DNA of 64,000 nucleotides. It comes from Schmidtea nova (Eukaryota). Numbering within the stretch: position 1 is the first letter of the stretch; the number at the start of each line of letters is the position of its first letter. This document shows, one piece after another, positions 6,546 through 56,805 of the stretch. The DNA lies in contig CM097883.1 of the NCBI GenBank assembly GCA_044892505.1, forward strand, positions 213,032,001 through 213,096,000. The letters run 5' to 3'. The notes below the pieces were generated by a model. It was not told the DNA's origin. It made no database searches and saw nothing but the letters and a program-made list of their open reading frames with translations. The translations under genes were made by a program, and so were the position numbers.

Positions 6546-7892
6546 ATGGATCTTTGCTGGATCAGCAATCGCCAACAATCGGAAATGTATAAAAACTGGA
6601 TCAACCAAATTGATCAGCAAAATAAATCTAATATTATAGAATTGTTGATATTTTACAATTTGAACCCAAATTTGATATCGAATCCTGAAATTTGGTCTCA
6701 GGAAATTGAAAAAGTGAAATTAATCCTTCAAGAAAACGTCTACAACGCAAATCCATCAGAAGAGTTGTCATTGTGCGTCTTGCACAATTACGTATTGACA
6801 ATCATACCGGCAATCATTCTTTTTTTCGGAACAATCGGTAATGTGATGTCGTTTATTGTGCTGTGCAATTTTGCGGGGAAAACTGTGTCGACTTTCATTT
6901 ATTTGAGTCTATTAGCGATTGTCGATCAGTTCGTGTTGATTTTCGGTCTTTTAAGGCGTTGGGTTGATTATCTCATGAAACGAAAAATTGAAAATCGAAA
7001 TAAAACCCTTTGCATTCTTTCTCAATATTTCGGAACGTCTGCCAGTGTGCTTTCGGTTTGGTTGATCGTGGCCGTAACGCTCGAGCGAGCTATTGTGATT
7101 TCGTTTCCATTCAAAGCGCACAATTTGATCCAAAAATCGCGAGCAATTGCTATTTCCATTTCAATGGCCTCGGCGATTTTGATTCTAAATTGTCATTTTA
7201 CGTTTACATTAGATCTAACCAACAGTACTCAGTTGTTTGAAGCGACCGACAACGCGTTTGTTTGTGGATTTTCCGTGTCATATAGGAATTTTAAAACCAT
7301 ATGGCTTTTGATTGACGCTGTCATTTACAGTTTTCTTCCATTTATCTTTATATTCGTATTGAATGTTATAATACTTATTAAAGTTTGTCAGGCTCGCAAA
7401 ACGAGACAGTCAATGATGACACTAAACAGGGGACAAAAGAGCGTTTATAGATCGGAAAGTACGAGACAACTGACAATAATGCTTCTGATGATTAGTGGAA
7501 CGTTTTTAATAACGACAACCCCGATTTTTATTGTAAAAATGTTATTTGTTGCTCCTAAGGCGTTTTCGAAAACCATTCTCTCTCATACTCCAGGAATCAG
7601 AGAGGCCGTTGCGTCACAATTCGCCGACTCAATTGCGGAAATCTTAATGCACCTAAACCACGCCATGAACTTCTATCTGTATTGCGCCAGTGGAAATAAA
7701 TTTCGGGCATGCTTGAAGTCCTTGTTTAGTAATTGTAAATTGTTTCGTTGTCTTCATTACTCCTCTAATTCGGCTGCCCAAAACAGTTTGTTTGCTAATT
7801 CAATGAAAATGACCAGACATTTAAACAATGATTCAAAGTGGATAAATGACGACCATTCATGCCAACTTGTTCGACATCGAATCGCTGATTGA
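6546..7892 (+). CDS. Class A (rhodopsin-like) GPCR, peptide/FMRFamide-receptor-like, single coding exon
   Basis: 448-aa ORF with 7 hydrophobic segments: TM1 GN, TM2 LAIVD, TM3 Cys and ERA (DRY equivalent), TM5 LP, TM6 FLITTTP, TM7 NHAMNFYLYCASGNKFR. N-glycosylation sequons present; putative acceptor TTTGCAG ~6392 and AATAAA ~8034. Confidence 0.93.
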   Translation: MDLCWISNRQQSEMYKNWINQIDQQNKSNIIELLIFYNLNPNLISNPEIWSQEIEKVKLILQENVYNANPSEELSLCVLHNYVLTIIPAIILFFGTIGNVMSFIVLCNFAGKTVSTFIYLSLLAIVDQFVLIFGLLRRWVDYLMKRKIENRNKTLCILSQYFGTSASVLSVWLIVAVTLERAIVISFPFKAHNLIQKSRAIAISISMASAILILNCHFTFTLDLTNSTQLFEATDNAFVCGFSVSYRNFKTIWLLIDAVIYSFLPFIFIFVLNVIILIKVCQARKTRQSMMTLNRGQKSVYRSESTRQLTIMLLMISGTFLITTTPIFIVKMLFVAPKAFSKTILSHTPGIREAVASQFADSIAEILMHLNHAMNFYLYCASGNKFRACLKSLFSNCKLFRCLHYSSNSAAQNSLFANSMKMTRHLNNDSKWINDDHSCQLVRHRIAD

Positions 7893-19714: not shown

Positions 19715-19965
19715 ATAATTATCTTTTTTTTTCACCTCTGATCTCTTTTTATTTATATTAAATATTTCTATAATAGTATGACTATAGATCAAATGTTTTT
19801 TAAAAAGTACACAATATTTCGGCACAGCCTTTATCAAGTGTGTATACTAGAATGTACACACCTGATAAAAGCAATGCCGAAATATTGTGTATTTGTTAAA
19901 AATAACTTTGATCTATAGTGATATCATTATGGAAATTATTGAAATAAACATTATAAAAGAAAATA
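19715..19965. ncRNA. Head-to-head pair of hammerhead motifs (19809-19843 minus, intact; 19856-19890 plus, variant), each with its tail
   Basis: ACAC-TTGATAA-A-GGC-TGT-GCC-GAAA-TA-TT-GTGT on the minus strand; CTGATAA-AAGCAATGCC-GAAATATTGTGT on the plus strand. Confidence 0.7.
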
Positions 19966-20529: not shown

Positions 20530-21004
20530 TTAACATAGTGTCAAAGTCTTTAAAATCAGTAAATATGTTTAGTTATAAATTTCAAACCCCAATAGGTTTA
20601 GTTTCTGATCTAGTGTATAAGTTTTTTTGTAAAGGGTGCCATGCCACATACATTGGAGAGACTTCCCGTCATCTCCGCACACGGGTTCAGGAACATAGCC
20701 GATTGAAAGGTGTGAGTAATATTATTGAGCATAGAAAAATGTGTAAAGGAGAAACTGACTTAAAAAATTTTTAAATTATATTAAAAAACTTTAACAATAA
20801 ATGGGAAAGAATTTTATGTGAGGCGTTGGTGATTAAATTACAATCCCCTACAATTAATATTCAATCAGCAACGAATTTATTGAGATTATTTAATTACCTC
20901 ATTAAATCATAGCCATTACGTCATTACTGTTTTCGTATATAGTATTTGATTTAGATTATAATGACAGACTGATGGTGAGGACTATGTCCTTGAAATATAT
21001 TTCT
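20530..21004 (+). mobile_element. Penelope-like element 3' fragment (GIY-YIG endonuclease) with a degenerate hammerhead at 20966-21004
   Basis: LVYKFFCKGCHATYIGETSRHLRTRVQEH...WERILCEALVIKLQSPTINIQ; downstream CTGATGGTGA-GGAC-TAT-GTCC-TTGAAA-TATA-TT. Confidence 0.85.
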
Positions 21005-21654
21005 ATTATGTGGCAATTTCGTGTTTTTAAATAATGTATATTTTATTTTATTTCTAAAGCTTTATATTTAAACATTTACTTAAATTTTTTCCTTTTCAGT
21101 GTCACTAGTTTCTTTTGATCCCAAATTTTAGTAAATATTTTTAATGCAAACTGTCGATATAAACTATGTGACATCATATCAGTTTCAGAAATAAAATTAA
21201 ATAGCTTCACTATTGAAAATATATGTTTCAATGTATGAAAATAATAAAAATAACGAAGTGCTGGAATTTCAATATCTGGACAATAGATGGAATGGAATTA
21301 GAGATGAAATATGAGTACAAAATCTCAGATTTTTTTTAATCAACAACATCAAAATAGGGGAAAAATCAATTATGAATAAATTTATTTTATTCAAAAAAAT
21401 TTTGTTTTTATATTTATTTTCATTTGTTCAGACTATAGATCAATATTATTTTAATTTAACATAAGGTTTTGGCACTTTTTAATAAATTTGTGATTAATGT
21501 GTTTTTTTACTTTTCAAGTCTAATAACACTTACAAAATGTCAGGCCCAAACATTTGAGTTAAAATTAAATAAAAAACAGATGTAAAAACTTAACGAAAAC
21601 AAATGAAAGTGTAAACAAATAGTACTCAACTGATATATATATATATAGATTTTA

Positions 21655-22015
21655 CTAGAAAGTACATAAAACAACTCCATCTATAGAAGAAACAAAATGC
21701 CAGATTCTACAAGAGGGATTCAAAAATTCATTACAAAGATTAGCTTCCGAGACTTTACATAAAAAAACAAACCGTCCATCAACAATCAATTCGCACAAAA
21801 AAATTAAAATAAATTTTTTTCATCCAATAAATTCATTATAAAATATAAAAAAAATAATTATGGTAACTATTTAGGAATAATTTAATATAACGATTGAAAT
21901 ACACACTTGATAAAGGCTGTGCCGAAATATTGTGTTATTGTTTATAAAAAAAATTTTTTGATCTATAGTCAGCATTATGAGAATTATTGATAATAATAAT
22001 AAAAAAAGATCAAAG
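21655..22015 (+). mobile_element. PLE 3' end plus hammerhead (21901-21935); mirror copy of 22170-22530
   Basis: Essentially identical reverse complement across the 22016-22169 gap; may be an assembly duplication. Confidence 0.6.
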
Positions 22016-22169
22016 NNNNNNNNNNNNNNNNNNNNNNNNNNNNNNNNNNNNNNNNNNNNNNNNNNNNNNNNNNNNNNNNNNNNNNNNNNNNNNNNNNNNN
22101 NNNNNNNNNNNNNNNNNNNNNNNNNNNNNNNNNNNNNNNNNNNNNNNNNNNNNNNNNNNNNNNNNNNNN

Positions 22170-23217
22170 CTTTGATCTTTTTTTATTATTATTATCAATA
22201 ATTCTCATAATGCTGACTATAGATCAAAAAATTTTTTTTATAAACAATAACACAATATTTCGGCACAGCCTTTATCAAGTGTGTATTTCAATCGTTATAT
22301 TAAATTATTCCTAAATAGTTACCATAATTATTTTTTTTATATTTTATAATGAATTTATTGGATGAAAAAAATTTATTTTAATTTTTTTGTGCGAATTGAT
22401 TGTTGATGGACGGTTTGTTTTTTTATGTAAAGTCTCGGAAGCTAATCTTTGTAATGAATTTTTGAATCCCTCTTGTAGAATCTGGCATTTTGTTTCTTCT
22501 ATAGATGGAGTTGTTTTATGTACTTTCTCCCAGTGTTCGTAATAATTACTGGTTTTGTTTTTAGTGTGTTCATTAAGTCTGGTGCGAAAAGTTCTATGTG
22601 TTTCTCCAATGTAAGTAGCGTCACATTTTTGACAAGAAAGTTTATATACTATATTTTTGGAAAAGCAAAAGCATCGGGTTGTGGAACGGCAAATACATTT
22701 ATGTTTGGAGATGTTGGAAATTGGTGGCTTTCGAAGTTGTGATTTTAACGATGCGGAGGTTATGAACGTTGGACGGATGTGGATAGGCAAATCTGTTTGA
22801 TTAAAAATGTTGGTGATTTTGTTGGCTGTAGTGTCATTTAGGAAAGGTAATCTTAGATATGTTGTGTGATTGTTATTGTTATTGTGTTTCTGGCGTTTCC
22901 TATTGTTGCGTTTATTGTGGTATGGTTCGTTAAGGAAGTATTTCTTTACAAATTTTTCAGGGTATCCATTTTGGAGGAATCGTAAGATTAGCTTCCGAGA
23001 CTTTTTACATAAAAAAATATAACCGTCCATCAACATTCAATTCGCACAAAAAAATTAAAATAAATTTTTTTTATCCAATAAATTCATTATAAAATATAAA
23101 AAAATAATTAAGGTTACTATTTAGGATTAAGTTAATATAACGATTGAAATACACACTTGATAAAGGCTGTGCCGAAATATTGTGGTATTATTTATAAAAA
23201 AAAATTTTTGATCTATA
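22170..23217 (-). mobile_element. 5'-truncated Penelope-like element (RT thumb + GIY-YIG) with an inverted pLTR at its 5' end; hammerheads at 22250-22284 (-) and 23151-23184 (+)
   Basis: FLQNGYP, YLRLPF, IVYKLSCQKCDATYIGETHRTFRTRLNEH; 22983-23217 is the reverse complement of the element's own 3' end. Confidence 0.88.
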
Positions 23218-31335: not shown

Positions 31336-33589
31336 ATAATAAATTGAATTTAAATATTAAAGTTATTAATTGGTCTGATTTTAATTTTAATAAAAAAGCC
31401 ACAAAATCGAGGTTCAAGATAAAATGTCAAGAGGACAAATATTAACTTTAAGTGAAGAATGGCAAAAATAATATAAAAACTAAGCAGATCTTCTTAATTG
31501 GAAGGGGGAGTAAAATTTATTTATAAATATCTGAATGCTTGTAAAATGCTAATGATATTATTCAATTTATTATTTAGATCTTATTAAAGTTCTACAAAGA
31601 TATTAGGAAGAAATTAATTTGTTTGAATAACATAATTTAAATTATCTAAAACGTAATATTAAATTAAATCTTCAACCAAATGATAACAAAAAAATGACTA
31701 TATAATAAATATTTTATTTTTGTTTTAAGAAATAAAAGTTATTATAATTATTCATTATGTCATTATTCTTATTCTGATACAATAATTATAGTAGTATTAT
31801 TTTTCATAAAGTTAATTAATTAATTAATTTGATAAATAATGATATTTTAAATTTGATATAATTATTAAAAACAATTCTTAGAAATTCTCTGGTAGCTCTT
31901 AGTAAATTAATTTCAAATTGAATTATTTCATTAAAACAAAAGCAAAGCCTAAACATTATTTTCTAGTAATGGAAATTTTATATGAATAATGTATTTATTT
32001 TCTTTCAGAAATTGATTACATTCATTATTTACTTGGTTCTGTTTTACTATATAAATAATTTTCAATTTTTGTGTTTAGTTAAATTTCGAAATCGTAAATA
32101 AATTATTGGAAAACGATTTATTTTTATATTTGTTAATCTTGATGAATGAAAAACTAATTTTTCTATCCTTTTCTATTAATTGACAGATTTAAACTCATTA
32201 ATAAATTCTCTAATGTTTTTCTAACAGACTTTTTTTGCCTAAATTTAAGAAAAGAAATTTCCGAAAAATTCGTATAATCATAAATTAAGATGAATTATTT
32301 GTGATAAAGATTTTCAAAAAATAGTTGTTTAAAATTTATTTAAAATTTATTTAAAATTTAAAATTTCTAATGATTGTTTAAATGAATGATATTTTTAAAA
32401 ATATCATTTTTAATTACTCAGTTTGTTTTAAGTGAAAGCACTTTAAAATGAAATATAAAAAGCAAAACAATTCGAGTTATTATTTTATTTTTGAGTATTA
32501 CAACAGCATTGAGAGCTAGCATGTTGATCTTTCTTGTCTTTCATTACTTATGGCACTTTTGGCTTTAGGGGAAATAATTTTAAATATGGAAAATTGATTA
32601 AATATGAAAATGAAAACATTTTAAAAACAAATGTTTTAAAATCTTTTTCATAAATGGAGATTTATATTTATCATTCAGTTCTTTCAAATAGAAATTACTT
32701 AAAAATTGTAAAAAGGTTTTAATTTTATAATGTGGCAACCCATATTTAAAAAAAAACAATTTATGTTTCTTTTCATCTTCTATTTTAATTTGAATATTTC
32801 TTTTATAAAATTTTGAGAAAACTTTGATAAACTTTTTACATAATTTATGTTTTTATTCTGTTTTTCAAATATTAGATCAGAAATTTACTTTTCTTCGATT
32901 CAATAATTCTTTTGCATTGTCTTTAAAATAACACTTGAAAAGGTTACTCCAGAAAACCAATGACAAAAATGGTTGTAACGATTTGAGACAAATCCTATTT
33001 TTTACATTTGCTATATGAATCTCTAATCAGATAAATTGTTATACATTTATATACTACTATCTGTTCATAATGTAAATGTTTCGGTCAAACTTGCAGTCAG
33101 ATAGAAAATTAATTACTCTATCTGAATGCATGTGTGTCTTTACAATCTGGCTGCGTTTGTACATGTTCATTGTGACTTTTTGTGTGTCAATTTCTTTTGG
33201 ATTTACATTGNNNNNNNNNNNNNNNNNNNNNNNNNNNNNNNNNNNNNNNNNNNNNNNNNNNNNNNNNNNNNNNNNNNNNNNNNNNNNNNNNNNNNNNNNN
33301 NNNNNNNNNNNNNNNNNNNNNNNNNNNNNNNNNNNNNNNNNNNNNNNNNNNNNNNNNNNNNNNNNNNNNNNNNNAAGTCACTAACAAAAAACTCACCAAA
33401 TATTATAATTAAAAAGACCAATTTGCCATTTTTAAATATATTTATGGGAAATATATTTCGATGGTATAACCATCATCTTCAGTCTTAAAATTATCGATTA
33501 TTTAAACAAATTATGCGGTCAAATATAAGTAACTACTATACAAATTTAAAGAATGAAAAATAAAATATTTCTCTTCTTTCCCTCTCTTC

Positions 33590-34515: not shown

Positions 34516-35124
34516 TATTAGTCAATCCTTTTGGTCGGCAATGCTCAAGAATTAGTGATATTAGTGATCAATTTAGGAAATGTGTCAGTAAAAAAATAGG
34601 TATCTCTGATTTTAAAATTATTTCAAAGGGTTTAAGTAATTATTGGGAACGAGTAACTTGTGAGGCATTGTTGATTAGATATTTTAATCCAAAAATAAAT
34701 AATCAAGTTGCCCGTTCCACTGATATTTTGAATGTGTTTAAGTAACCGAAGGTTGAATGTTGCGAATTATGTTTGTGGTATAATTATGTTTGTTTGTTTT
34801 TTTTGGTAAAAATTTTAATTTTTTTAAAATATTTAAATTTGTAAATTTTATGTTGATTGTTAAAATTTTATTAAATTAAATTTTATTTTATTTTTTAAAA
34901 AAATACGTATGTTGTTCTATGTAAAATGTTTGTTTTTAATTAAATTTTAAAAAATTTTTATGTAATAAAATAAAATAAATTAAATTTTTAAATTAAAATT
35001 TTGATATAGTATGGAGATGATTATTATTGATAAACTTGTTTAAATTTAGCATATTTTCTATTTTATTATTGATTGTCCTGATTGCTGTCTGACGAAGATT
35101 GTTATACAATCGAAATATATCACG
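34516..35124 (+). mobile_element. PLE 3' end with downstream hammerhead
   Basis: DFKIISKGLSNYWERVTCEALLIRYFNPKINNQ...VFK* ends at ~34745; ribozyme ~340 bp downstream on the same strand. Confidence 0.8.
35086..35124 (+). ncRNA. Minimal type I hammerhead ribozyme
   Basis: TGT-CTGACGA-A-GATTG-TTATA-CAATC-GAAA-TATA-TC-ACG: intact core, 5-bp stem II, palindromic stem III, AUC triplet. Confidence 0.8.
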
Positions 35125-35739
35125 TTTATGTTGAACTTACTGAGTTGGCGTTTTTCTATAATTAAATCATTGCNNNNNNNNNNNNNNNNNNNNNNNNNNN
35201 NNNNNNNNNNNNNNNNNNNNNNNNNNNNNNNNNNNNNNNNNNNNNNNNNNNNNNNNNNNNNNNNNNNNNNNNNNNNNNNNNNNNNNNNNNNNNNNNNNNN
35301 NNNNNNNNNACATTTGTTTTTATCTGAAATGGCAAATGAGTTATTGTATAATTCTTTAAATTTATTTTTATCCTTTAACATAAAACAAGTCATCCGTATC
35401 ACTCCTTCGTCTCATTAGTCGCCGTTGTACAACCCAAGTGTAAATCCGCGAGATCATTAATTGGTTATTTTTCATTAATTTAATTTTTAAAAATGGAAAA
35501 GCAAAACCTTTTGTGAAAACATTTAATAGAAATTTAATAAAAAAATATAATTAAGATAACACGTGGATCTTTTGCTTTGTTATGTAAAATGTTTATATGC
35601 CTCAATTTTTTGTTTGAATAATATATTTGAATATAAATAGAGAATATAATAGAATCTCTGAATAATCCAATTCAAAAATTTATTTAATTAAAACTTTTAT
35701 AGATATTTTTTGTTTTTTATGAATAAAAGAAATTTGCGA

Positions 35740-40599: not shown

Positions 40600-41490
40600 A
40601 AAACAAACGCCAATCTAAATATAGATTCTGCATAAAATAATTCGAGAACTTAATTCTCTTCATCAAGTGCTCCTCACTCTTCTATTCAAATATAAATCAA
40701 ATAAAATGATTTATCAAACAAATTAATAATAATTTTAAAAATAAAATGTATTTTATAAATTTTATAAAATAGTCAAAAAATTTAAAAAGATTAAAAAATT
40801 TTTAATTTAAATAAATTAATCTTAAAAATATAATATTCTCTTTTTTATAAAAAAATATTTTTTTAATAATATTTATAAATATTTTCATATTTATAAACAA
40901 CAGAATGATTGAAAACAAAATCTATAATCCCAATTGAAAATCCTCTAATACTCGAGTACAGAAAAGACGGTCAGTCTTCTCCGAAGTATGTGGCATTTCG
41001 CCCATGACATTTGAAATATTAAACGAGTATAGAACACAAATCAAAAGAAACAAATAAACATCGTCAATAATCACATCAGTTAATTTACTCAAACCACACT
41101 CAAAACTCACACTCACATATTCACAAACATCGATATGACTGAGCATTTTCAATTTGGGATTATAGATTTTGTTTTCAATCATTCTGTTGTTTATAAATAT
41201 GAAAATATTTATAAATATTCTTAAAAAAAATAATTTTTTATAAAAAAGAGAATATTATATTTTAAAGATTAATTAATTTAAATTAAAAAAATTTTTAATC
41301 GTTTTAAATTTTTTGACTATTTTATAAAATTTATACAATACATTTTATTTTTAAAATTATTATTAATTTGTTTGATAAATCATTTTATTTGATTTATATT
41401 TGAATGGAAGATTGAGTAGCACCTGATGAAGAGAATTAAGTTCTCGAAATATATTGTGCAGAATATATATTTGGATTGGCGTTTGTTTTT
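40600..41490. mobile_element. Palindromic PLE-type remnant: ~340-bp inverted arms around a ~200-bp core, with an outward-facing hammerhead in each arm
   Basis: 40600-40945 is the reverse complement of 41140-41490; the core has weak GIY-YIG-like STEKT / FEIL..R..KP text. Confidence 0.7.
41419..41459 (+). ncRNA. Minimal type I hammerhead ribozyme, canonical core
   Basis: GCAC-CTGATGA-A-GAGAA-TTAAG-TTCTC-GAAA-TATA-TT-GTGC; a mutated mirror copy lies at ~40630-40670 (-). Confidence 0.85.
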
Positions 41491-43200: not shown

Positions 43201-44451
43201 CGTGGTGCGCCCAATAAGTCGTGAGACTAATATAGAAATAATAATAGTAAAAAGATTGATACAGACATATTTAAACTTCAACATATATAGGAAGAGAAAA
43301 TGTATTTTTGTTTTAATAATCCATTATTGTTTAAGTATATTTTTGCGAACATTCGAAAAATGCCTCTGGAAACTATTCGATACCGTAGCGTTATTCGCTT
43401 TCTCTTTCTGAAAGGAAAAAATAGAGAAGAGGTTCTTTCGTAACTGAAAGCTGTTTACCAACAAGAGTGCCCATCCACAGCAACATTTATCATTGGTTCA
43501 ATTACTTTCAGAGGGGTAGAACCTCCGTGGTGGACGAAGAAAGATCGGGAAGACCCTCAGAAATTGATGAAAAAATAGCGCAAAAGATTCAGACAATCGT
43601 GCAAAACGAGAGAAAAATAACGACGAGAGGGCTCACAACCCGTCTAAATGTGAGCAAAGGCACTGTGCATACTCTCGTCACTGAAAGTGGGATTCGAAAG
43701 CTATGTTCCCGTTTTGTGTCACGCTTCTTAACGGTGGAAATGCGACAACGATGCATGACCAATGTTGGAGACAATTTCATTGATAATATCATTACTGTGG
43801 ACGAAACACCGTTGTCCCTTTATGTCCCAGAATCTAAAAGAGAGTCTCAAGAATGGAAACTGCCAGGAGAAAGCAGCTCACTGAAAATGCGGTCCTCAAC
43901 TTGCCACCGAAAAGCTCTCATGCTGACGGTGTTTTGGGACGCCAATGTCATTATTCTGACTGACTTTGCTGAATCCGGCGTCAAGATCAATAGTTCTTAC
44001 AACTCCAACATCGTGCAGCAAGCAAGGAAGGCATGACGCAAGAGCAGAGTGTGTGATCTCTATTTTTTACACGATAATGCTCCCATACACACCAGCAGCG
44101 TTTCCATGGCCAAAATTGAGCGTTGCGGGCTCAATTTACTTCCCCATTCACCATACAGCCCCAATTTGGCTCCCTTCGATTTTTTCCTGTTTAACCATCT
44201 TAAGAAGCATCTGCGGGGCCAGGTGTTTGCCAACAAACATGATTTGAGAGCAGCCGTAGAGAGTTTTCTGGGAGAAAAGCCTCCAGAATTCTTCAAAAAC
44301 GCCTTCGAAAACCTGGGAAAATTGTGTCAGTGCAGAAGGAAATTATTTTGAGAAATGATTCCTATTTACCATGTTTGTTCTAAATACAAAGTTTTGTGTT
44401 GATATCTTAGGTCGTTCTATTTTAGTCTCACAACTTATTGGGCGCACCGCG
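43201..44451 (+). mobile_element. Full-length mariner element (D,D34D; irritans-like) with a disrupted transposase (43360-44351)
   Basis: 28-bp TIRs with 2 mismatches, TA TSDs at 43199 and 44452; RYRSVIRFLFLKGK, RSGRP, ITVDET, HDNAPIH-34aa-D, YSPNLAPFD; stops and frameshifts. Confidence 0.95.
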
Positions 44452-45732: not shown

Positions 45733-48700
45733 CAGGCCTTATTTTAACTTGCAGTGATAACCAATTTGTGCAGTGATAAAATGTAATGTTTTTGTTAGAA
45801 ATTTTGAATTAGCGTGAAGTGTAATGTAATTTCTTATCATCTTGATATTGCTCCCCTGTTAATTTCATGCGCTTGGTCCTTATTTCAATCACAGGATAGT
45901 GAGCCGCCTCATCCATAAGCAAAACAGACGTTTCATTTACTGGTCGCATTGAAAGCAACAAACCATGTTCTCCCTCATACTTTTATTTCACTCACACAAC
46001 TAAGGAACTTACTTCTCTCTTCTGGAGTACCCTTGGCATGTAATGTACTTGTGTGCAAACAACCTATCCAACTGTGACAGAGCCATCGCGCATGTGCCTC
46101 TCTGTCCATATAAATGTATGACCTTATAGAGAGAGTTGTTTGTCTTTCGCCTATCACAGACAGTCCTGTCAAAATATTTAATACAATGTATACACACGCT
46201 AGCGATTGATAACCTATACACACGTAATTCTGATACTTTTAGCTGGAAAGCCTGCAAACACGATGTGCATTAAAATTGTCCGGCAAACAGAAGGGACTAG
46301 CGAACTAGCCACAAAAGTTTGTCTGTGTGAAGGTGTGAATAGACTTTGCTGATTATGGAATTAGGTTTACATACAACGTTTTTATGAATAGATGGTGTAG
46401 TTTATAAAATTATCTAATACGGGAATGGAATCCATGCGTGTGAATAAAATGTGCTTGAATACAGTCTACTGTCTCCTCCCCCTCATTTAAGTGTTGAAGC
46501 ATACCCTCCTTTGGCCCTTTTTAAACAGTAGACTCGTCTACAACCAGTTTGTGAACCACGCACTAAGTATTTTTCCGCTGCCCGTGAATTCATTTTCCAG
46601 CATTCAGTTGTGATTGAATTAGCTCAGGTGTTCTTGTCTTGTCAATCTAAACGAACATCTTCGCTTTTTATTAACCATCTCCAAACATTCCTTCAGTCAG
46701 TGAATTGCACTCTATTGAATCTATTCCATCAACTAGTTCTTCATGTGTTGTAGCCGGGAACTCCGTTGATAATATTGAATCGTCTGACTCTTCGTCCATT
46801 GTGTCACAGAAGTGTATTGATCCTCATGTGTCTACTGATTCTAGATGTGATGTGTCTGAGAATACGGATTCCATTGAAACAACTGATTCTTCGTCTATTG
46901 CGCTGAAAAACTCTGTTGATCATAAATCACCAGCTGGCTTTTCGTGCGTCGAAAATGTGCCAAACCACAAAGGCCAGTGCAAACGTGAGCGATGCCGTAT
47001 TTGTAAAGAACAACAAGACACTGCTAAACGGTTCTGCTACCGCCAATATGCACTGAAAGTGGGACTGAACATCGAAGCGAGGTAATTAAAATACATTTGA
47101 ATAGTGACATCCATAAGGAGAGTTATAAAGCAGCTCATCTTGCATCCCTATCAATGTCTCAAAAACTTCAAGAAGTTCCTCTTATTAAATCAATCAACCA
47201 AATGAACACTACTCTTGCCGATAAAATCGGTGGACTGATGTACCATGTGTACAATGATGCCAGAAATCTAAAAATTTCAGCCTATTCTTTCCTATCTCGC
47301 GTAGTTGCTGCGGAAATGTCTAAATTATTCCACATTAATGAGCCTTTCACTCCTTTCTCATCATCCAACATAGACCTACAATATATTTCTCCTCTGTCAC
47401 AGCACGAGATGATGGAAGCAATCGTAGTGGCGGATATGCCACGCTTCAAGCGTGAGATCGAAACATGTCTTGATGCCTCCTTCCGGTTTGATTCTTCGAT
47501 GGATCGCACTAAAAAGGAGAACCAGTTCGAACTGATGAAAACGATAAACCTCAATGGCTATGGACGTTTACTATTCATTGGCATCGGGCAAGTCAGAGAA
47601 AGTGGAGTAACTGGACATTTAAAGGCAATCAAAGAAGAATCAGAAGAAACAGTTGGGTTTGATGCCTTGTTTAACATAATAACACACTTGTCAACGGATG
47701 GAGAACCGAAAAATGTCGGGAAACATGAAGGCCTCTGGCCTTTGCTTGATCGAGAACGAAAAGAGCGACAAAGCAGTTTGCCCTTACTTAAATCCGTCGG
47801 TGGTGTTCATAGTTCGGCTTTGGCTTTCAAGGATCTATGCAAAAATGTGACAGACATATCTCATTTACTCGAGAAGATTTCTGATATATCCACTTATTTT
47901 CCTATGAGCGCTAAGCGTTCAACCGAGCTCGAAACAGTTGCCAACGAAGGTGGACTGATAGTTCGACGTCTACCAAAATATTTTGAGGTTCCCTGGGCTC
48001 AATTCTCTCACTCACTCTTGGATGCTGTTCTCTCTTCCTGGCGAGCTCTAACATAGTATTTCAGCACATTGGAAGGTTCTCAAAACAAGAAATTTGGGAA
48101 AATTCTATCGAACAAAACAAATATCCAACTGATGGCGTTCATGGCTGATCTACTTTTTCTCCTAACTAATTTTCAAAAGCGGTTGCAGTCTGACTCAATC
48201 ACCATTGTCGACTTGCCGAAAGAAGTGTCCCATTTTCTCTAAAAGCTGGAAACTCTACAAGGAAAACCTCTGCTTGGAGGATGGGAAGAAGCTCTCTGTG
48301 TGAATCTTACGCCTAAGAATGTTTTACATGGTGTTCAACTTTGGGAAAAAGAACGTCAAATGATTGCGAGAAATATGTTTGTGTCAGAAGAAAGAGACTT
48401 TTCTGCTGTTCGGCAAGAAACAGTTCTAACAATGAAACATTTCATGGAATCTCGATTTGCTCTCAGTGACACATACACAAATGCCGCCACAAATTTTGTC
48501 ACTTTCAAGGTGAATGATGAGGATATACGGAGTGTTCATCACACATTTGCTCCTGACTACGATTAATGACCAATATACGGATGTTTTGCAAGGTCGCAAC
48601 GAGAACAAAAAACTTTTGGAGACACTCCAGCAAATGTGCAAGTCTGAGCAATATGATGAGCTAACTAAAGTGTTCAGCCGGATTTTGGTATGGAAGTCCC

Positions 48701-49701
48701 ATTCTGCTGACTGTGAAAGAATTATATCAGCATACAATCTACTCAAAACTTCTTCTCGCTCTTGTTTGAATAGGAAAACGATAAAAAACTATCTGCTCAT
48801 TTTTATGAACATGCCACCTCTCTCTGCCTTCGACCCACGGTCTGCGGTGATGAAATGGATGACTGCGAAAAACAGAAGATTCCGAGACTCTCCAAAGGCT
48901 CAAGACCAAGAATGGTTAAAAAACATTTTCATATCCTCCTGTCCCACAGAAGAAACGGAAACATTTGATATGAAATGAAAAAACAGGAAATTTTGATGCA
49001 TGTTATGTCTGTATGATTTCTCTGTGTTTATTCTCTCTCTCTCTTTCTCTCTCTCACACACACGTCCTGTGTTTGTATCAATTTCATTATTATTATCTGT
49101 TTAGTGTTGTTGTTTATATTAATTATCAAACAAATTGGAGGACATTTCAGATCATTTAACATTCATATTTGAATAATGAGTCATGGAAAACTTTTAAAGA
49201 CAAAAATCTTTTAATTGAAAACATTCTTGTTGCTCGATATAGGTATCGAAAGTGAAAATTAGCATCTTGCTCATTTTAAAATTTTACTCAGCATTTTGTG
49301 CAGGCATAAAGGTAAAACCATTTTTATCACATTGTCAATTTTAGAGGCAGTGTTTAATCAAGATGTGTTTCCTTCTACCCCCAAAAACACAAATCTCCCA
49401 AGTGGTCTTAAATATGTAGATGTTGCACCTCCAAAACTAACCAGTTTAGATCAAACACCGTTTAGAAGGGAATCCTCCTTAACAGGGTTTCCGCCAGAAA
49501 TTCCACCTGAGGGGATGGCTCACCCCCATTGGAGTGTGTGGGGTGTATAATGAATGCATTCATGTACCCAAATTTTCAAAATTTTGGAGGGGGCTGTTGT
49601 CATTACAATGGAGGGGTATATAACTCCCGGCTCCTCAATTAAGGTACGTCTGAATAAACTATTGTTTGTGCAGTGATAAAAATTACTTAAAATAAGGCCT
49701 G
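45733..49701 (+). mobile_element. Full-length hAT element (ZNF862/C17orf113-like transposase, disrupted; coding ~46700-48978)
   Basis: 15-bp perfect TIR CAGGCCTTATTTTAA, perfect 8-bp TSD GCAGAGGG (45725-32, 49702-09); FDSSMD, STDG, GVHSSALAFKD, HSADCERIISAYNLLKTSSRSCL. Confidence 0.93.
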
Positions 49702-50073
49702 GCAGAGGGACATTATTAAAAATAAATACATACCGAAAATATATTTTATCTTTTAATTTTTTACAAAGTTTTTGTCAATTATTATAAACATAATCTTCAA
49801 TTTTTATTAAAACATAAAACAGAACACTTTAGAAATAAATAAGCTAGAAATAATAAAATTTTAATCTTTTTAGTAATTTGAATAATTTGAATAATTTGAA
49901 ATAATTTGAAATAATTAATATAAATATAAATTTTTATATTCCATTCATAACTATAGTGATTTAAACAAAAAACAAATTTTGTTTATAAAAATGTTTATAA
50001 ACTGTACATGTATAAAAATATTTTTTTTCAAGTCTAGGACATCTTTCGGCCGAATATGCATGTTTGTGTGTTA

Positions 50074-50591
50074 CAGTTAAAGCACGTAAATTGCAGTGAG
50101 TGTATACACTAACTAGTTGATGCATACTTTAACTTATTGTTTTAGTGAAAGTATACATTATTTCATATGATACATACTGTATCTAGTCAATGCATTCATT
50201 AACTAGTGAGGGTATACACCCACTGATTTGCATAGATGATAGTATTAGTTGAATGATTCTAACCTCAAGATTTTAAAGACTCGTGCTAGTTGAGTCTACT
50301 GGAAATAGAAATCTTGCGAAATTTACAAAAAAAGATTATGAAAAACCACTAATTTATTAATAAATAATAAATATATTTAATAAAAATTAATAAATTGTAA
50401 AAATATTTATCATATATGACAGTAGATAATAAACAAACCATTGAAATATTTAATAACTAATTAAAATAACTAATCTACAGTAGAAGGTGTATACACTAAC
50501 TAGTGTTCTCATAAATTTATTTGTGTATACTTCATCTGATTAGTTTAGTTAAAGTATACTTTAGCTAGTGGGTGTACACATTGACTAAGTT
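50074..50591. mobile_element. Second copy of the 42.4-kb MITE, truncated by a gap
   Basis: Collinear with 42376-42890. Confidence 0.85.
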
Positions 50592-52359
50592 NNNNNNNNN
50601 NNNNNNNNNNNNNNNNNNNNNNNNNNNNNNNNNNNNNNNNNNNNNNNNNNNNNNNNNNNNNNNNNNNNNNNNNNNNNNNNNNNNNNNNNNNNNNNNNNNN
50701 NNNNNNNNNNNNNNNNNNNNNNNNNNNNNNNNNNNNNNNNNNNNNNNNNNNNNNNNNNNNNNTGTGTACAGACTGTTGGTTTTTATTCGTTCAAACCATT
50801 ATTAGTAAGGTTTTCTTAGTCTTATTTAGATCTCTACGAAGGTTGTCTAATAAAGAAAATAATTTCAGAATATAATTAAAATTTAATTTCTATTGTAAGG
50901 AACATAGTAAATTGTAATTATATTTTAACTTTATTTAATTATAATATTTAAATACTAAATCAAATAATTTTAAACAAATTCAAATAATTTTATATTATTA
51001 AAATTAAAATTATCTTTTGTAAATAATATTTATTGACTGCTAAATTAAATAATACTTGTATAAATTAGTATACTATTATTGCTTTAATTGACAAAATTAA
51101 TTTTAATTTTAATTGTATCAAAAATTTATTAAGTTCAAAAAATAGAATTTGTTGTTTTTATTGTTTCAAATAAAATTTTAAAAACATTTCATTTAAAATT
51201 TTTTCTTATTATTTAAGTTTTAATTTTTTTCAAAAAAAATTATTTAAAAGTACTGAAATGAGTAAAACAATTATTTGCCAATTAAGTTTAAGGAAGTTTA
51301 ATTTGAAAGGCTTTCAATATTGAAACTTTTTTGACAGGACAGGGAAAGAATAGTTCCGGCTTAAAGCGTGAGCCAATTTGGTAGTGATTCATGATGAAAA
51401 GGTTTGAGTGGTGACATAGATAATAAATAAGCAAATGTTGTTCAATATTCAAACAGTACTTAAAGGTATTTATATTTTTAATGCATTGATATTTTAATTA
51501 AATTAAGAAAATAAGTATATTGTTTTAATGTCATCTGAAATTAAGGAGGTCAAAAATAGCAGACTTGGCTCGGGGTGTCTTTCAGTCTTCAGTCGGTCAC
51601 GCCTCCATCTCAGCAGCAAATAAATTATCTTTTCAATTAAATATTTGTTTAAACTCATAAAGTATTAGCGCAATTAAATAAATAATCTCTAAAATAGAAT
51701 CTTGACTTATCTCTTAAAATTCATTAGTAATTTTTTTATTTATTTTCTACTGTCAAATAATATTAATATGAATAAAAGGAATAAGAATTTTAAGATCTGG
51801 ATTGATCAGTGGTGATGATAAAACCAATGAAATTGATAAATTAAAATTGATAACGTCCTCAAATAAAAAAATAAAGATTTAATTATTTTTGTTTTATTCA
51901 CAAATTCCATAATAGAGAAAAACAAATTTGTTTACGGTTGAATTTAATTATGATATTTGTGAAATTATTAATAAATAATCTTTATTTAATTTTATTTGAT
52001 TTATTAAATTTTTAAAGAAATATATATTTTTTAACGTCTGTTGAAAATCTTTTAATTAAGTAATGTAAAAAATATATTTTAACATTTATAAGTGATGAAT
52101 GAAACTTTAACTTTAATAATTAAAGAAAATATTTTGAATAAAAAAGTAGAACTGAAAAAAAATATTGTAAAATTTTAAGATTGAAATAGTAATTGAAAAT
52201 TAATATTTCTTTTTCTAAAAAGAGTAAACTGAGTAAGACGTTTTGGCAATTTTGATAAAAACTTAGAATGTTGACCTATGATTTTAGATTCCAAAGAATT
52301 AAGAACAAAACTATTTTTTGGGATTTGTTAATAATTCTTAAGGTTTTTTGACAAAATAT

Positions 52360-53381
52360 TGTTGAGGATACCTAAAACACAAAATAATATATAAATAAAA
52401 AAATTACCTGGGGGAAAATTGATTGGACAAATAATGTGATCTTTTGGAGGCCGAAAAGAAAAAGACACAGCCAAAAATTGGAAAATGAGAAGTTGGGAAC
52501 AGACAAAAGAGATGAAAAAAAATCAAAAACAAAGGACATTCCTAATTAATAAGTACAAAAACGAGAAAGGAATTTTCAAAACGAAAACAAAAACAAGTAG
52601 GAAAGTAAAATTCTGACAGCTTGTCGGATAACAGGAGTGCGGATAAAAGTCGGCTTAAAAAGGAAAAAGGGATATCTGAAAAAATCTGGACAGCTGTCAT
52701 AGATAAAACGGAATTGGGAGAAAATACGAAATGTCCGGGAATCAAAATGCAAATAACAAAATTATCTCTAGTGCCATACAATTTGATGAGTTATAAAATG
52801 GGAAGGATATACAAGTTTTAAACAGAAGTTGTGGGAGAAGATTTAGTAGAAAATTTGAAATTGATAAAGAAAAAGATTGAAACCTGAACAAAAGTGAAAC
52901 TTAAAACTTTTAGTGGAAAATACGAAACGAATTTGAAATACGAAAGGAGAAATTTGATATACGAAAAGAAATTAGTAGATTAAATCAGTTGCAGAAATAA
53001 AAAATTGTGTTGCAAAGACAAAGGAAGCTAAGCAGGTGACAATTCAAAAGACCAAAGAATATTAAGTGAAAATAAAATCAAAGCGCGAAACAATCGAAAT
53101 CATTTACCAATATTTAATCCAAATCAGCGGTTAGTAGTTGTTGTTTTCTAGACATTATACAATAGAGCTATTCTTCACAAAGTGTCATAATAAGCTCGTA
53201 TATTTGTTTAAAGAGGTATTGAATTGATCGTGATATTTTGAATCTTGTAATTCATTGTAATAATCAAAAAAAAGTTTTTGTCATTGAAATTGTGAATTGG
53301 GGGTCAATTAAAAGCACGCTTTGAAGTCAGGTATTTGATTGGTAACTTTTACCATTACAACATCAACCCAATAACCCAACA
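52360..53381 (+). mobile_element. Solo LTR (Gypsy-type), 4-bp TSD ATAT
   Basis: TGTTG...CAACA termini with ATAT on both sides; same family as 30326-31335. Confidence 0.85.
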
Positions 53382-55381
53382 ATATCAACAAAATGATGAG
53401 GTGAGAGTTCAATTCCAGCAGCTGTTAAGATAACGTTGATTTCGTCAGTTGTAAATCTACATTTAATGAAACACAAATCCATGAAGTAAAATACTAAATT
53501 TATAAATATAGCAATGCAGTCAAAATTTAATAAAAAGTTACTCTTTGATAAATTCACCCGTAAGAGATCAAATTTAAATTATTTATTAATTATTTATTTT
53601 CATTTATTTTATTTATTTTCATTTAAGGATCAACTGTTCAGATTATTGCGTGCCGAGAATGCTGATTACTTGTAACAGCTGATTTTTTAAGCAGCCATAT
53701 GAACAGAGTGATCTTAAAGTTCACAATAATTGTAAATTTTATAATAATAAACAGATTTATTATTTTCTATGGGAATTGGCATTTCTTCTGCTGCTAGTTA
53801 TACTTTTCTGCATTTAAATTTAATATCGTTTTCATGTTTAATTTTAAAATCTAAACAAACCGATTAATAATAATAATTAAAATAATTATAATAATTATTA
53901 ATAATTAATTATAATAAAATATATTTTTACATATTTAAGTTGAATGTAAATAAACTACTTAGATTAAAGTTAATTTAAATATAAGCAAAAAAAATTTTAA
54001 AATTGCTTAAAAAGGAGTCAACTTTAATTTCTAAATTAAAATAATTTTTACTGTAAAATAAAGTTTGCAAAAAAAAACATTATATTATTTATATTATTTT
54101 TTCTTTTTGTTTTTCTGATGAAATACTTTTCCGTAGTCTGATTACATGAAGTCATAAAGGCCTTTGATATTATCCGAAATAATCTAATTTATGAATTAGT
54201 GCAATTTATATTTTATAATATTAAATTTATAGATTATTTTTTCCAGTGCTAAATGCTATATAATCTATTTAATTCATATTTGTAATAATGTATAAATTCA
54301 AGTCGGGCAGATTTGTGCACGAAAAGCATTTATTGGCATTGCATATAACAGCATTATTTTCACTGAAAATCATTATATATAATTAAGTACACATCATTCA
54401 GAAATGTTAGTGGTAAATAATTTATTTACAGTTTCTCTAAAAACTATTTAAACATTAGGGAAAAGATAAATTGGAAAAGTATCAGTTTAAAATACACTAT
54501 CCTACATAATTTCCCAGTAATTCAAAAAAGTTCTCCCATTTTATAGTGTCATAATTGTTTTATCGAAACACCCAAAAGAATTCCTTTTGTCGAATTCACT
54601 AGTCACTTTAATTCAAAATTTCAATTAAATAATTTATTNNNNNNNNNNNNNNNNNNNNNNNNNNNNNNNNNNNNNNNNNNNNNNNNNNNNNNNNNNNNNN
54701 NNNNNNNNNNNNNNNNNNNNNNNNNNNNNNNNNNNNNNNNNNNNNNNNNNNNNNNNNNNNNNNNNNNNNNNNNNNNTTTAAAATTGTTAAACTTAATTAG
54801 AAAAAGTTGATAACTGCTTTAATATTTACATAATTTAAATATTGCAATAAATATTTAAAATATAGAATTGATCATAAACAAATAAAGAAGATTTAATGAC
54901 AATAAGATAAAATACAAACAAAAAATTAAAAGATAAGTATATTGAAATAAAATGATAATTACTTATAAAGGAATATATTTAAAAATAAAATATTAACTTT
55001 ATAAGATGAAACTTGTATATAATTTTTAAAATATTATTTTCAAATTAAAATTTCAAATGTGTTATGTTTACAAATTTAAAAATATTAATATTTCGTATGT
55101 TAATGTCAATGAAATAAGTAGCTAGTTATGTGGACTCCACAGCAAAAGAAATTGCGTAATCGATGAGTCATAGCCAATGAAAATAGATTCAAGCACTGGG
55201 CCCCTTTTTTGCGATACACGCACCATAATTTATTTTCGATACCCTCCATAAATCTTCCTTTTACACACACACGATGACCTCATAATAACATTTTTAAAAT
55301 TATTTTTAAAATTTGATTATGTATCTATATTACTATTATAATAGTACTATTTCCCTAGGTATTATTATTATTGATACTTTT

Positions 55382-55419
55382 ACTATTATTATTTTTATAT
55401 TTTTATTATTATTATTATG

Positions 55420-55460
<41 letters not shown>
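55382..55460. repeat. (ATT)n microsatellite
   Basis: Imperfect trinucleotide run. Confidence 0.9.
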
Positions 55461-55461
<1 letters not shown>

Positions 55462-55479
55462 ATTGTTGTTATTAAAATC

Positions 55480-55630
55480 AATAGTTTTCATAATAGTAAG
55501 ACTATAGATCAAAATTTCCTTAAATAAGTGCACAATATTTCGGCACAGCCTTTATCAAGTGTGTATTGATAAATGCTTTGCCGAAATATTGTGCAATTGT
55601 TTAAAGAAATTTTGATCTATAGTCTTATCA
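55480..55630. ncRNA. Second head-to-head hammerhead doublet (55530-55564 minus, intact; 55563-55594 plus, variant)
   Basis: CACAATATTTCGGCACAGCCTTTATCAAGTGTGT immediately followed by ATTGATAAATGCTTTGCCGAAATATTGTGC. Confidence 0.7.
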
Positions 55631-56024
55631 TTATTACCATTCATTATGTATCATTTGCTGTGATTTGTGTGTTTGACGAAATAAACATTATTTTTTTTGT
55701 TCAATGTGTTTGATCAAAGTGACTCGCACAGTCAGCCTATTGGATCCTACCTGTGGCATTTTAAGGATAAACCCAACACTTTTATGAATTCAACAAAGTT
55801 GATATAAATAATAATTGATTACAATTGTCTTGAAAAAAAGAAGTAAAATCATTTGTTTCTTTTTTTCTTTTCTTAATTCTCATTTAGTTTTTCGAATATT
55901 GATCAATATTTAGTTTGTTTTGTTTTTAGGTTGATTTGTGTTGAATCTAAGCTTTTATTATTTTCTATTTCTTTTATTTCTTTTGTTTATTAATTTTTGT
56001 CATTTAATTAGGCATAGATTTAAG

Positions 56025-56805
56025 TGATCGGTAAAAACGTTTAAATTGTCAGTAATCTAAACTATTAAAAGATCAATAAATTAATTTAATTATCAGTAAA
56101 TAAATTGCCCTATAAATATAAAAAATATATTATCAATTTAATAAAATAATTATAAGTAAATTGAATTATATATCAGTAAAATAATTAAATTAGTACGTTA
56201 ATATGTCCTATGGAACCAGTACATTCTTTCATTCAACATTACTTAAAACATTATTTAATTTAAAAAAACATATTACCAAAAATGGCGATGTCTCAAGTAG
56301 AGGAATATGTTAGTGATGAAGATGAAAGCTTAACAACAGTAACTAATACCATTCATAAGAAGAGAGGCTGTCAGAAGAACTGGATAAAAGTAGCAACACT
56401 GCAAAAGAAGCAGAAAATCATTGGAGAAGATATGGTCCAAATATTACACAAACAAAACTGATGAAGGACGAAGACTATACTTTCGATGCAATGAAGTCAA
56501 ACGTGGACCTCGATATAGTGCAAAGATGCAATTATATTATCATGCATATAATGATAAACTAATGGCACTGAAAACAGAAGAAGACCATGATCATGATCAA
56601 AATTATAGTACTCGTGGTAGACCAGCAAAGGCTAAACGTGCATTGCTAACTCAGTAACTGTACTGATAATAATTTTAAATTTACTGATCAAATAAAATCT
56701 TTGACTGATCAAATATGTAAAGATTACTGTTATTTTTATTTATTTATTTACTGACATATTTAACTTCTACTTACTGACCATGTTAAAACTTTTTTACTGA
56801 CCATT
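56025..56805 (+). mobile_element. Non-autonomous MULE-like element retaining a WRKY/FAR1-like DNA-binding fragment
   Basis: WSKYYTNKTDEGRRLYFRC..KRG..AKMQL..DHDH; inverted TCAGTAA-rich repeats at both ends. Confidence 0.5.

What the first reader, a model, noticed from the sequence alone, without database searches (positions are those of the whole stretch)
21901..23184. High-copy hammerhead family with a U3-A8 compensatory core and a dimer-only stem III
Seen: ACAC-TTGATAA-A-GGC-TGT-GCC-GAAA-TA-TT-GTGT is intact at 19809(-), 21901(+), 22250(-), 23151(+) and 55530(-), with further partial copies. Established: C3-G8 is a tertiary Watson-Crick pair and U3-A8 swaps are tolerated; PLEs carry minimal type I hammerheads that cleave as dimers. 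Inference: both core positions changed together, which implies selection for catalysis. The loop-less AUAU stem III can only form between two copies. Four other hammerhead types in the window show independent stem II covariation.
Basis: partly seen in the sequence, partly recalled or inferred. Interest (0 to 1): 0.75.

Follow-up and report, generated by a model that had tools for sequence, protein, structure and literature searches.

The report
Penelope retrotransposon mini-hammerhead, U3-A8 variant
The repeated 33-base motif is the stripped-down hammerhead ribozyme motif that Penelope-like retrotransposons carry near their 3' end; its swapped core pair (U3-A8) was published in 2011 and 2014, so this is an ordinary, very abundant member of a known kind, and nothing here shows that it cuts RNA.

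Summary
The motif is real. It is exact at 19809(-), 21903(+) and 22250(-), and has one stem I mismatch at 23153(+) and 55530(-). The genome (1.25 Gb) holds about 57,000 copies.

It lies 62 nt after the stop of a GIY-YIG/RT (Penelope-like element, PLE) ORF and about 70-105 nt before the element's 3' end, in sense. This is where PLE minimal hammerheads are known to sit.

It has every published min-HHR hallmark except a long helix II:
- an unpaired base after A9;
- a G10.1-C11.1 pair;
- a palindromic AUAU with no loop 3;
- a 4-bp helix I.

Four canonical C3-G8 types of the same build lie in the window.

U3-A8 covariation in nature was published by Perreault 2011, and in PLE min-HHRs by Cervera & de la Peña 2014.

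The case for selection is thin:
- U3-A8 arose once here.
- Most copies are identical by recent descent.
- Fixed U3·G8 lineages also transposed.
- The two copies at 21903 and 22250 are mirror images in a perfect 359-bp palindrome around the assembly gap.

No RNA data exist, so cleavage is untested.

Earlier follow-ups of this scan reached the same verdict on other pieces of this genome.

The parts
21903..21935 (+). Min-HHR copy, exact. Layout: ACAC (helix I 5'), UUGAUAA (positions 3-9, U3 and A8), bulged A, GGC-UGU-GCC (helix II), GAA, AUAU (15.1-16.1), U17, GUGU (helix I 3'). Predicted cleavage between 21931 and 21932.
21657..22015 (+). Left arm of a perfect palindrome. It is the last 359 nt of a PLE copy (end of the ORF remnant, 3' UTR, HHR, tail) and runs into the gap.
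22016..22169 (.). Assembly gap at the exact centre of the palindrome. Continuity is unknown and the gap was not filled.
22170..22249 (-). 3' tail of the minus-strand PLE copy. It holds the conserved tail box (TTTGATCTATAG) and an optional extension.
22250..22282 (-). Min-HHR copy, exact, and the mirror image of 21903-21935. Predicted cleavage between 22254 and 22253.
22344..23036 (-). ORF holding the GIY-YIG endonuclease domain of the PLE. True element homology ends at 22984. The stop codon lies 62 nt upstream of the HHR on the same strand.
22984..23217 (+). 5'-truncated PLE copy joined head-to-head to the minus copy, 221/231 identical to it. It carries an HHR at 23153-23185 with one mismatch (GTGG).
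19780..19919 (-). Head-to-head pair of short copies that folds as a long hairpin (-73.5 kcal/mol for the 19780-19925 stretch folded). The sense HHR at 19809-19841 is exact. The opposite arm at 19856-19892(+) is a diverged copy that reads C3-A8.
55500..55624 (-). Head-to-head pair of short copies of the B subfamily, forming a hairpin (-70.5 kcal/mol for the 55500-55630 stretch folded). HHR at 55530-55562 with one mismatch (GTGC).
41417..41461 (+). Canonical C3-G8 min-HHR, type 1 (helix II GAGAAU/GUUCUC, stem III AUAUAU).
40628..40672 (-). Decayed type 1 copy (U3, damaged GAAA region), lying head-to-head with 41417.
35083..35127 (+). Canonical C3-G8 min-HHR, type 2 (helix II GAUUGU/ACAAUC).
33444..33488 (-). 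Canonical C3-G8 min-HHR, type 5 (helix II GAUGGU/ACCAUC).
20963..21007 (+). Further min-HHR type (helix II GAGGAC/GUCCUU, with A9>G and C11.1>U). It lies 190 nt after the stop of a second ORF, 20538-20774(+), whose GIY-YIG match is weak (below Pfam's cut-off).

Best explanation
The motif is the minimal type I hammerhead (min-HHR) of one very successful family of Penelope-like retrotransposons. A full unit is about 2.77 kb. In order it holds an RT + GIY-YIG ORF, 62 nt of 3' UTR, the 33-nt HHR, and a tail of about 70-105 nt that ends in (TAA)n or an optional extension.

The core pair 3-8 is U-A instead of C-G. All other core bases are standard.

Shown here: identity, position, copy number, and the relation to canonical types in the same genome.

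Inferred from the literature: in the PLE transcript the motif could cleave after AUU only when two copies pair through AUAU and swap helix I strands, and probably only with help from the element's protein.

The genomic copies are dead insertions. Most are about 130-nt forms holding the HHR plus tail, often laid down head-to-head. That layout fits the published finding that a PLE protein cuts and primes on both DNA strands and starts reverse transcription inside the RNA.
For: - Core and architecture read directly: U4 G5 A6, A9, G12 A13 A14, A15.1, U16.1 and H17=U are all present. So are one unpaired base after A9, G10.1-C11.1, a palindromic AUAU and a 4-bp helix I. These are the hallmarks listed in PMC4209133.
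- Context: Pfam GIY-YIG, 26.7 bits against a cut-off of 22.6. The full-length tandem unit L031 has RT motifs, including YIDD, plus GIY-YIG. Its nearest Atlas clusters carry RVT_1 and GIY-YIG.
- Same layout, ORF then HHR then tail, at a second PLE-like remnant in the window (20538-21007; its GIY-YIG match is below cut-off).
- Canonical C3-G8 types with the same build: 13,178 copies, with stem covariation.
- A model built only from those canonical types aligns the U3-A8 copies end to end in the expected register.
- Genome census with one descriptor: U3-A8 50,291, C3-G8 13,178, C3-A8 911, U3-G8 709. So 97.5% have a Watson-Crick 3-8 pair.
- Subfamilies A and B share an identical 33-mer while the spacer just downstream differs at about 7 of 19 positions.
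- Literature: U3-A8 in nature; in PLE min-HHRs; internal RT initiation, the tail, and cutting of both strands.
Against: - No cleavage evidence: no RNA run was found, and the four runs that hold the sequence are contigs of unknown kind.
- The model built from canonical types scores the motif only 8.8-12.9 bits (E about 0.8-9 over the window).
- Rfam gives no hammerhead hit. It also misses the canonical copy at 41417, so this weighs little.
- Helix II is 3 bp, against 6-8 bp in published PLE min-HHRs.
- The nearest-neighbour energy of the double hammerhead is -6.4 kcal/mol. Two monomers give -11.8 and a non-hammerhead duplex -17.7.
- In head-to-head pairs a read-through transcript would lock the motif in a hairpin of about -70 kcal/mol.
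- The whole 33-mer is conserved, loop and N7 included, not just the core. That fits a protein-binding or other sequence-specific role as well as catalysis.
Confidence: 0.8

Rival explanations
1. The motif descends from a hammerhead but no longer cuts. It is kept in the master element for another role, such as a binding or positioning site for the PLE protein near the internal start of reverse transcription, or part of the promoter or 5' end of the short transcript.
For: - All 33 bases are conserved between subfamilies, not only the core.
- Helix II is only 3 bp and the dimer fold is weak.
- Lineages with a fixed U3·G8 also spread.
- 22 of 30 copies end 0-10 nt upstream of the motif, so the motif marks a discrete 5' end.
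- Published: hammerhead mutants do not affect PLE insertion in vitro, and no RNA-seq reads end at the cut site.
Against: - The only two core changes are exactly the pair that restores a Watson-Crick 3-8 contact.
- Every other catalytic base, the NUH site and G10.1-C11.1 are intact.
- U3-A8 cores are reported active in vitro.
Confidence: 0.15
2. The motif is primarily the arm of a fold-back element. In this reading it is a miRNA- or siRNA-type hairpin, or the terminal inverted repeat of a DNA transposon, and the hammerhead likeness is incidental.
For: - Rfam's only hits are weak miRNA-like hairpins at 19807-19892 and 55518-55605, for example 44.3 bits against a gathering score of 84.
- The hairpins are very stable.
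- About a fifth of perfect copies sit in head-to-head pairs in which both arms are perfect.
Against: - Junctions differ from pair to pair, so each pair formed at its own insertion and not from a hairpin master.
- Single copies and full-length tandem units carry the motif once per unit, in sense, after the ORF.
- Dual motifs on opposite strands are already described for PLEs.
Confidence: 0.03
3. The likeness to a hammerhead is chance, in an AT-rich repeat.
For: The model score is marginal (E about 0.8 over 128 kb searched), and Rfam gives no hit.
Against: - The match lies on the right strand, within the roughly 150 nt where PLE hammerheads are expected. Scaling E to that space gives about 1e-3.
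- It shares the unusual bulge after A9 and the GAAAUAU continuation with all canonical types of this genome.
Confidence: 0.02

Closest known systems
Minimal hammerheads (min-HHR) in the terminal repeats of Penelope-like elements, including the U3-A8 variant of Schistosoma mansoni Cercyon (Cervera & de la Peña 2014, PMC4209133)
   Same: Type I; no helix III or loop 3, with palindromic 15.2-16.2; unpaired base between 9 and 10.1; G10.1-C11.1; helix I of 4-5 bp; located in the PLE repeat; U3-A8 instead of C3-G8; mostly solitary or opposite-strand pairs from truncated elements.
   Different: Helix II is 3 bp with a UGU loop here, against 6-8 bp. There are about 50,000-57,000 near-identical copies of one sequence here, against about 1,300 heterogeneous hits. 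Here the U3-A8 type outnumbers all canonical types about 4 to 1.
Natural U3-A8 hammerhead core variants (Perreault et al. 2011, PMC3088659)
   Same: The same compensatory change of the tertiary C3-G8 pair. That paper states such cores were already shown to be active in vitro.
   Different: Those are full three-stem hammerheads from other contexts, not loop-less PLE motifs.
Poseidon PLE of Anolis carolinensis, PAc (Frangieh et al. 2024, PMC11167929)
   Same: The hammerhead lies about 90-100 nt upstream of the internal start of reverse transcription that defines the 3' end and optional tail. Both DNA strands are cut and extended, which would give head-to-head copies. The targets are AT-rich.
   Different: The PAc hammerhead is C3-G8 and overlaps the ORF start. 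Its cleavage was shown and needs the protein. Nothing was assayed here.
Double-hammerhead of newt satellite and ASBVd RNAs (Forster et al. 1988, as cited in PMC4209133 and PMC6765202)
   Same: An unstable or absent stem III, so activity is expected only when two copies pair.
   Different: Those retain a short stem III with a loop and lie in close tandem repeats. Here, same-strand copies are usually 2.77 kb apart or in different transcripts.
Animal non-LTR retrozymes (PMC7229834; bioRxiv 10.64898/2026.07.22.740005)
   Same: Short non-coding hammerhead-bearing repeats thought to derive from PLE repeats.
   Different: Retrozymes are tandem units bounded by full hammerheads that give circular RNAs. 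The short form here is a dispersed 130-nt unit of HHR plus tail, often palindromic.

Membership tests
PLE minimal hammerhead (min-HHR, Cervera & de la Peña 2014) | Conserved catalytic boxes: (C/U)3 U4 G5 A6 N7 (G/A)8 A9, G12 A13 A14, A15.1, U16.1, H17 | tested here: met
   UUGAUAA ... GAAA ... U, then U17, read directly. Positions 3 and 8 are U and A, a published variant.
PLE minimal hammerhead (min-HHR, Cervera & de la Peña 2014) | One unpaired nucleotide between A9 and G10.1, and a G10.1-C11.1 pair | tested here: met
   A bulged A followed by GGC...GCC. The bulge position is shared by every type examined in this genome, and G10.1-C11.1 by all canonical ones.
PLE minimal hammerhead (min-HHR, Cervera & de la Peña 2014) | No helix III or loop 3; positions 15.1-16.1 form a short palindrome usable only between two copies | tested here: met
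   AUAU. A hairpin would need a 2-nt loop. The canonical types here have AUAUAU.
PLE minimal hammerhead (min-HHR, Cervera & de la Peña 2014) | Short helix I (4-5 bp) | tested here: met
   ACAC/GUGU, 4 bp. It drops to 3 bp in the copies at 23153 and 55530.
PLE minimal hammerhead (min-HHR, Cervera & de la Peña 2014) | Larger than usual helix II (6-8 bp) | tested here: not met
   3 bp with a 3-nt loop. The canonical types in this genome have 6 bp.
PLE minimal hammerhead (min-HHR, Cervera & de la Peña 2014) | Located in the terminal repeat of an element encoding RT plus GIY-YIG endonuclease | tested here: met
   GIY-YIG by Pfam. RT motifs and a tandem 2.77-kb unit in L031. The HHR lies 62 nt after the stop codon, in sense.
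PLE minimal hammerhead (min-HHR, Cervera & de la Peña 2014) | Recognised by a covariance model of canonical min-HHRs from the same genome | tested here: inconclusive
   8.8-12.9 bits, E 0.8-9 over the window, with a full-length alignment in the right register.
PLE minimal hammerhead (min-HHR, Cervera & de la Peña 2014) | Site-specific self-cleavage (as a dimer or with protein) | not testable with these tools
   No RNA runs were found. Only contigs of unknown library kind hold the sequence.
Rfam hammerhead families (type I/II/III and HH9/HH10 models) | Score at or near the family's gathering threshold | tested here: not met
   No hammerhead hit even at E<=10 on 81 nt. The control canonical copy at 41417 also gets none, so these models do not cover loop-less PLE motifs.

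The most novel reading that the evidence does not exclude
The roughly 130-nt form (HHR plus tail) may be a discrete retrotransposition unit and not a random 5' truncation. Transcripts would start 0-10 nt upstream of the hammerhead inside the PLE repeat. Reverse transcription would start at the first internal tail site, giving run-off cDNAs laid down on both target strands. On this reading the U3-A8, 3-bp-helix-II motif would serve mainly as the 5'-terminal structural or recognition module of a SINE-like PLE parasite, and this would explain why it outnumbers all canonical hammerheads about 4 to 1.
Probability: 0.25. Interest if true: 0.5.

Novelty: new member of a known kind. Interest (0 to 1): 0.2.

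Why it matters
It adds one more genome, and a very large family, to the published class of Penelope-element mini-hammerheads. It also shows that a U3-A8 core with a very short helix II is compatible with massive amplification. That bears modestly on the open question of what PLE hammerheads are for: a variant expected to be a poor ribozyme is here the most successful one. The sharp 5' ends just upstream of the motif give a testable handle on how short PLE copies arise. It does not reveal a new kind of ribozyme or element.

Tried and rejected
- Rfam, at gathering thresholds and at E<=10, on the whole window and on 81-86-nt cut-outs. No hammerhead hit, but the canonical control also fails, so this is uninformative. 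The weak miRNA-like hits reflect the head-to-head hairpins.
- RNA evidence: no RNA run was found. Laying the four runs of unknown kind gave only contigs. These show many head-to-head junction variants 0-7 nt upstream of the motif, but no molecule ends.
- Per-copy conservation as a test of selection: rejected. Copies are dead and young (about 3% mutated at a sampled site), so their identity reflects descent.
- Search for a numerous C3-A8 or U3-G8 intermediate of this family: only point mutants were found.
I replaced it with a gapped pattern.
- Lünse et al. 2017 (PMC5785218) is not held. It is cited only through the review PMC6765202.
- Complex prediction, structure prediction and the large protein searches were not used, because no claim here needs them.
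- The organism's name was not determined.

Full report
**Observation**

The 33-nt motif (window:21903-21935:+) occurs five times in the window, against 0 expected. It is exact at 19809(-), 21903(+) and 22250(-). It has one mismatch in the outermost helix I base at 23153(+) and at 55530(-).

The gap was tested first. 21657-22015 is the exact reverse complement of 22170-22528, with 359 of 359 bases matching right up to both gap edges. None of the other eight gaps shows this. The copies at 21903 and 22250 are therefore mirror images of one another, either a true palindrome or a fold-back assembly artefact, and count once. Nothing that matters here depends on continuity across the gap. I did not try to read or fill it.

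**Copy number**

The window's genome is 1.25 Gb. It holds 56,842 matches with up to 3 mismatches, against 0 for the reversed control. A 14-nt box in the downstream tail occurs 57,876 times.

**What surrounds the motif**

- ORF 22344-23036(-) has a GIY-YIG domain (Pfam 26.7 bits, cut-off 22.6). Its stop codon lies 62 nt upstream of the motif on the same strand.
- Perfect copies spaced 2,759-2,767 bp apart in the same orientation led to a full tandem unit, L031. It carries reverse-transcriptase motifs, including YIDD, followed by GIY-YIG, broken in that copy. Its nearest protein-atlas clusters carry RVT_1 and GIY-YIG. This is a Penelope-like element (PLE).
- Downstream of the motif, a tail of about 70-105 nt ends either in (TAA)n or in an optional extension. 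This matches the published PLE 'tail' created by internal initiation of reverse transcription.
- Within the finding's span, the minus copy runs from 22185 to 22984 and is 97% identical to L031. It is joined head-to-head at 22984 to a 234-nt plus copy.

**Is it a hammerhead?**

Read as a type I hammerhead, the motif has:
- helix I ACAC/GUGU;
- U3 U4 G5 A6 U7 A8 A9, then one unpaired A;
- helix II GGC-UGU-GCC, with G10.1-C11.1;
- G12 A13 A14;
- A15.1-U-A-U16.1, then U17.

Apart from the long helix II (see below), these are the hallmarks that Cervera & de la Peña list for PLE 'min-HHRs'. They describe no helix III or loop 3, palindromic 15.2-16.2, a nucleotide between 9 and 10.1, G10.1-C11.1, and a helix I of 4-5 bp.

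The same genome has 13,178 canonical C3-G8 motifs of identical build. They belong to several families whose helices covary: 91.7% of cells are paired against 67.1% in shuffles, helix II is 98.6% paired, and 8 of 10 pairs change on both sides.

A covariance model built only from those canonical families finds four such types in the window, at 41417, 35083, 33444 and 20963, plus a decayed copy at 40628. The model aligns the U3-A8 copies end to end in the right register, but at only 8.8-12.9 bits (E 0.8-9 over the window). Restricted to the roughly 150 nt between ORF and tail where a PLE hammerhead is expected, that is about E 1e-3. The figure rests on one sequence family.

Rfam finds no hammerhead. 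It also misses the canonical copy at 41417, so its silence means little.

The one hallmark not met is helix II: 3 bp here, against 6-8 bp published.

**Selection**

A single descriptor (Y3...R8, bulge, G10.1, 7-15 nt, C11.1, GAAAUAU) gives this census:

| Core pair 3-8 | Copies |
|---|---|
| U3-A8 | 50,291 |
| C3-G8 | 13,178 |
| C3-A8 | 911 |
| U3-G8 | 709 |

So 97.5% have a Watson-Crick pair. These are copies, not events.
- U3-A8 hits outside the main helix II are almost all point mutants of the one family, so the switch happened once.
- Mismatched combinations are about half to three-quarters single mutants of the canonical families and the rest single mutants of the main family, at rates expected for decaying dead copies.
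- Diverged lineages with a fixed U3·G8 wobble exist (L043-L045, L047-L049). A non-Watson-Crick 3-8 pair therefore did not stop transposition.

Some constraint on the master element is visible. Subfamilies A and B have the same 33-mer, while the adjacent spacer differs at about 7 of 19 positions and the 75-nt tail is about 83-86% identical over aligned bases, with gaps. The whole motif is conserved, loop and N7 included, and so is the tail box. This does not single out catalysis.

**Dimer claim**

AUAU cannot close a hairpin, so any helix III must be intermolecular. That part is geometry and is the published min-HHR idea.

Nearest-neighbour energies do not favour it. The double hammerhead is -6.4 kcal/mol, two monomers -11.8, and a non-hammerhead duplex -17.7. 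The canonical type 1 gives -15.4 against -16.6.

Published min-HHRs cleave poorly even as dimers. The Anolis PLE hammerhead needs the element's protein and is dispensable for insertion in vitro.

**Genomic forms**

Of 30 perfect copies, 8 continue far upstream and 22 end 0-10 nt upstream of the motif. None ends between 11 and 65 nt.

Many short copies lie head-to-head with junctions that differ from pair to pair. The same junction variety appears in contigs of four public runs. The pairs fold into hairpins of about -70 kcal/mol, which explains the weak miRNA-like Rfam hits.

Opposite-strand pairs are already noted for PLEs. The reported cutting and priming on both strands would produce them. 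That link is my inference.

**RNA evidence**

None. No RNA run was found, so cleavage after AUU is untested.

**Novelty**

Natural U3-A8 covariation was reported by Perreault et al. 2011. U3-A8 min-HHRs in PLE repeats, about 1,300 hits in S. mansoni, were reported by Cervera & de la Peña 2014. This is a new, very abundant member of that kind. It has an unusually short helix II and dominates the canonical types.

Earlier follow-ups of this scan on other pieces of the same genome reached the same conclusion.

Noticed in passing
window 21657-22528: A perfect 359-bp palindrome is centred exactly on the assembly gap 22016-22169. No other gap in the window has mirror-image flanks. It may be a fold-back assembly artefact or a real tail-to-tail PLE pair.
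   Followed up: partly
L001-L030 (G000:C1) and window 19809, 55530: The 5' ends of copies are bimodal. 22 of 30 end 0-10 nt upstream of the hammerhead, 8 are long, and none ends between 11 and 65 nt. This suggests a discrete RNA 5' end, perhaps a transcription start in the repeat, and not random truncation.
   Followed up: partly
window 19856-19892(+) against 19809-19841(-): The two arms of this hairpin differ. The sense arm is exact. The other arm has five changes (it reads C3-A8 with a weakened helix II) that appear as G·U wobbles and one mismatch when the minus strand is folded. 55530's partner arm is also more diverged than its sense arm.
   Followed up: no
L043, L044, L045, L047, L048, L049 (G000:C1): Diverged min-HHR lineages share a fixed U3·G8 wobble, several of them with G10.2·U11.2, next to C3-G8 relatives with the same tails. 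This could be the intermediate state between C-G and U-A.
   Followed up: partly
L042 and L046 (G000:C1:96069355-96069584, 98808863-98809092): Two hammerhead-like motifs lie in the same orientation only about 45 nt apart. That close tandem, unlike the main family, could pair in cis.
   Followed up: no
G000:C1:4728070-4741587: Six same-strand canonical type 3 hammerheads are spaced 2,697-2,698 bp apart, a tandem array of another PLE family.
   Followed up: no
G000:C1:2147308-2196887: Four identical B-subfamily hairpin copies are spaced about 16.5 kb apart, which points to a tandem segmental duplication.
   Followed up: no
L051 (G000:C1:12762243-12762472): A single copy of canonical type 1b carries both C3>U and G8>A. 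It is an isolated second instance of U3-A8 on a different helix II.
   Followed up: no
window 43467-44036, 47097-48978, 6546-7892: These ORFs look, by eye only, like a mariner-type transposase fragment, a hAT-type transposase fragment and a seven-helix receptor. None was tested.
   Followed up: no
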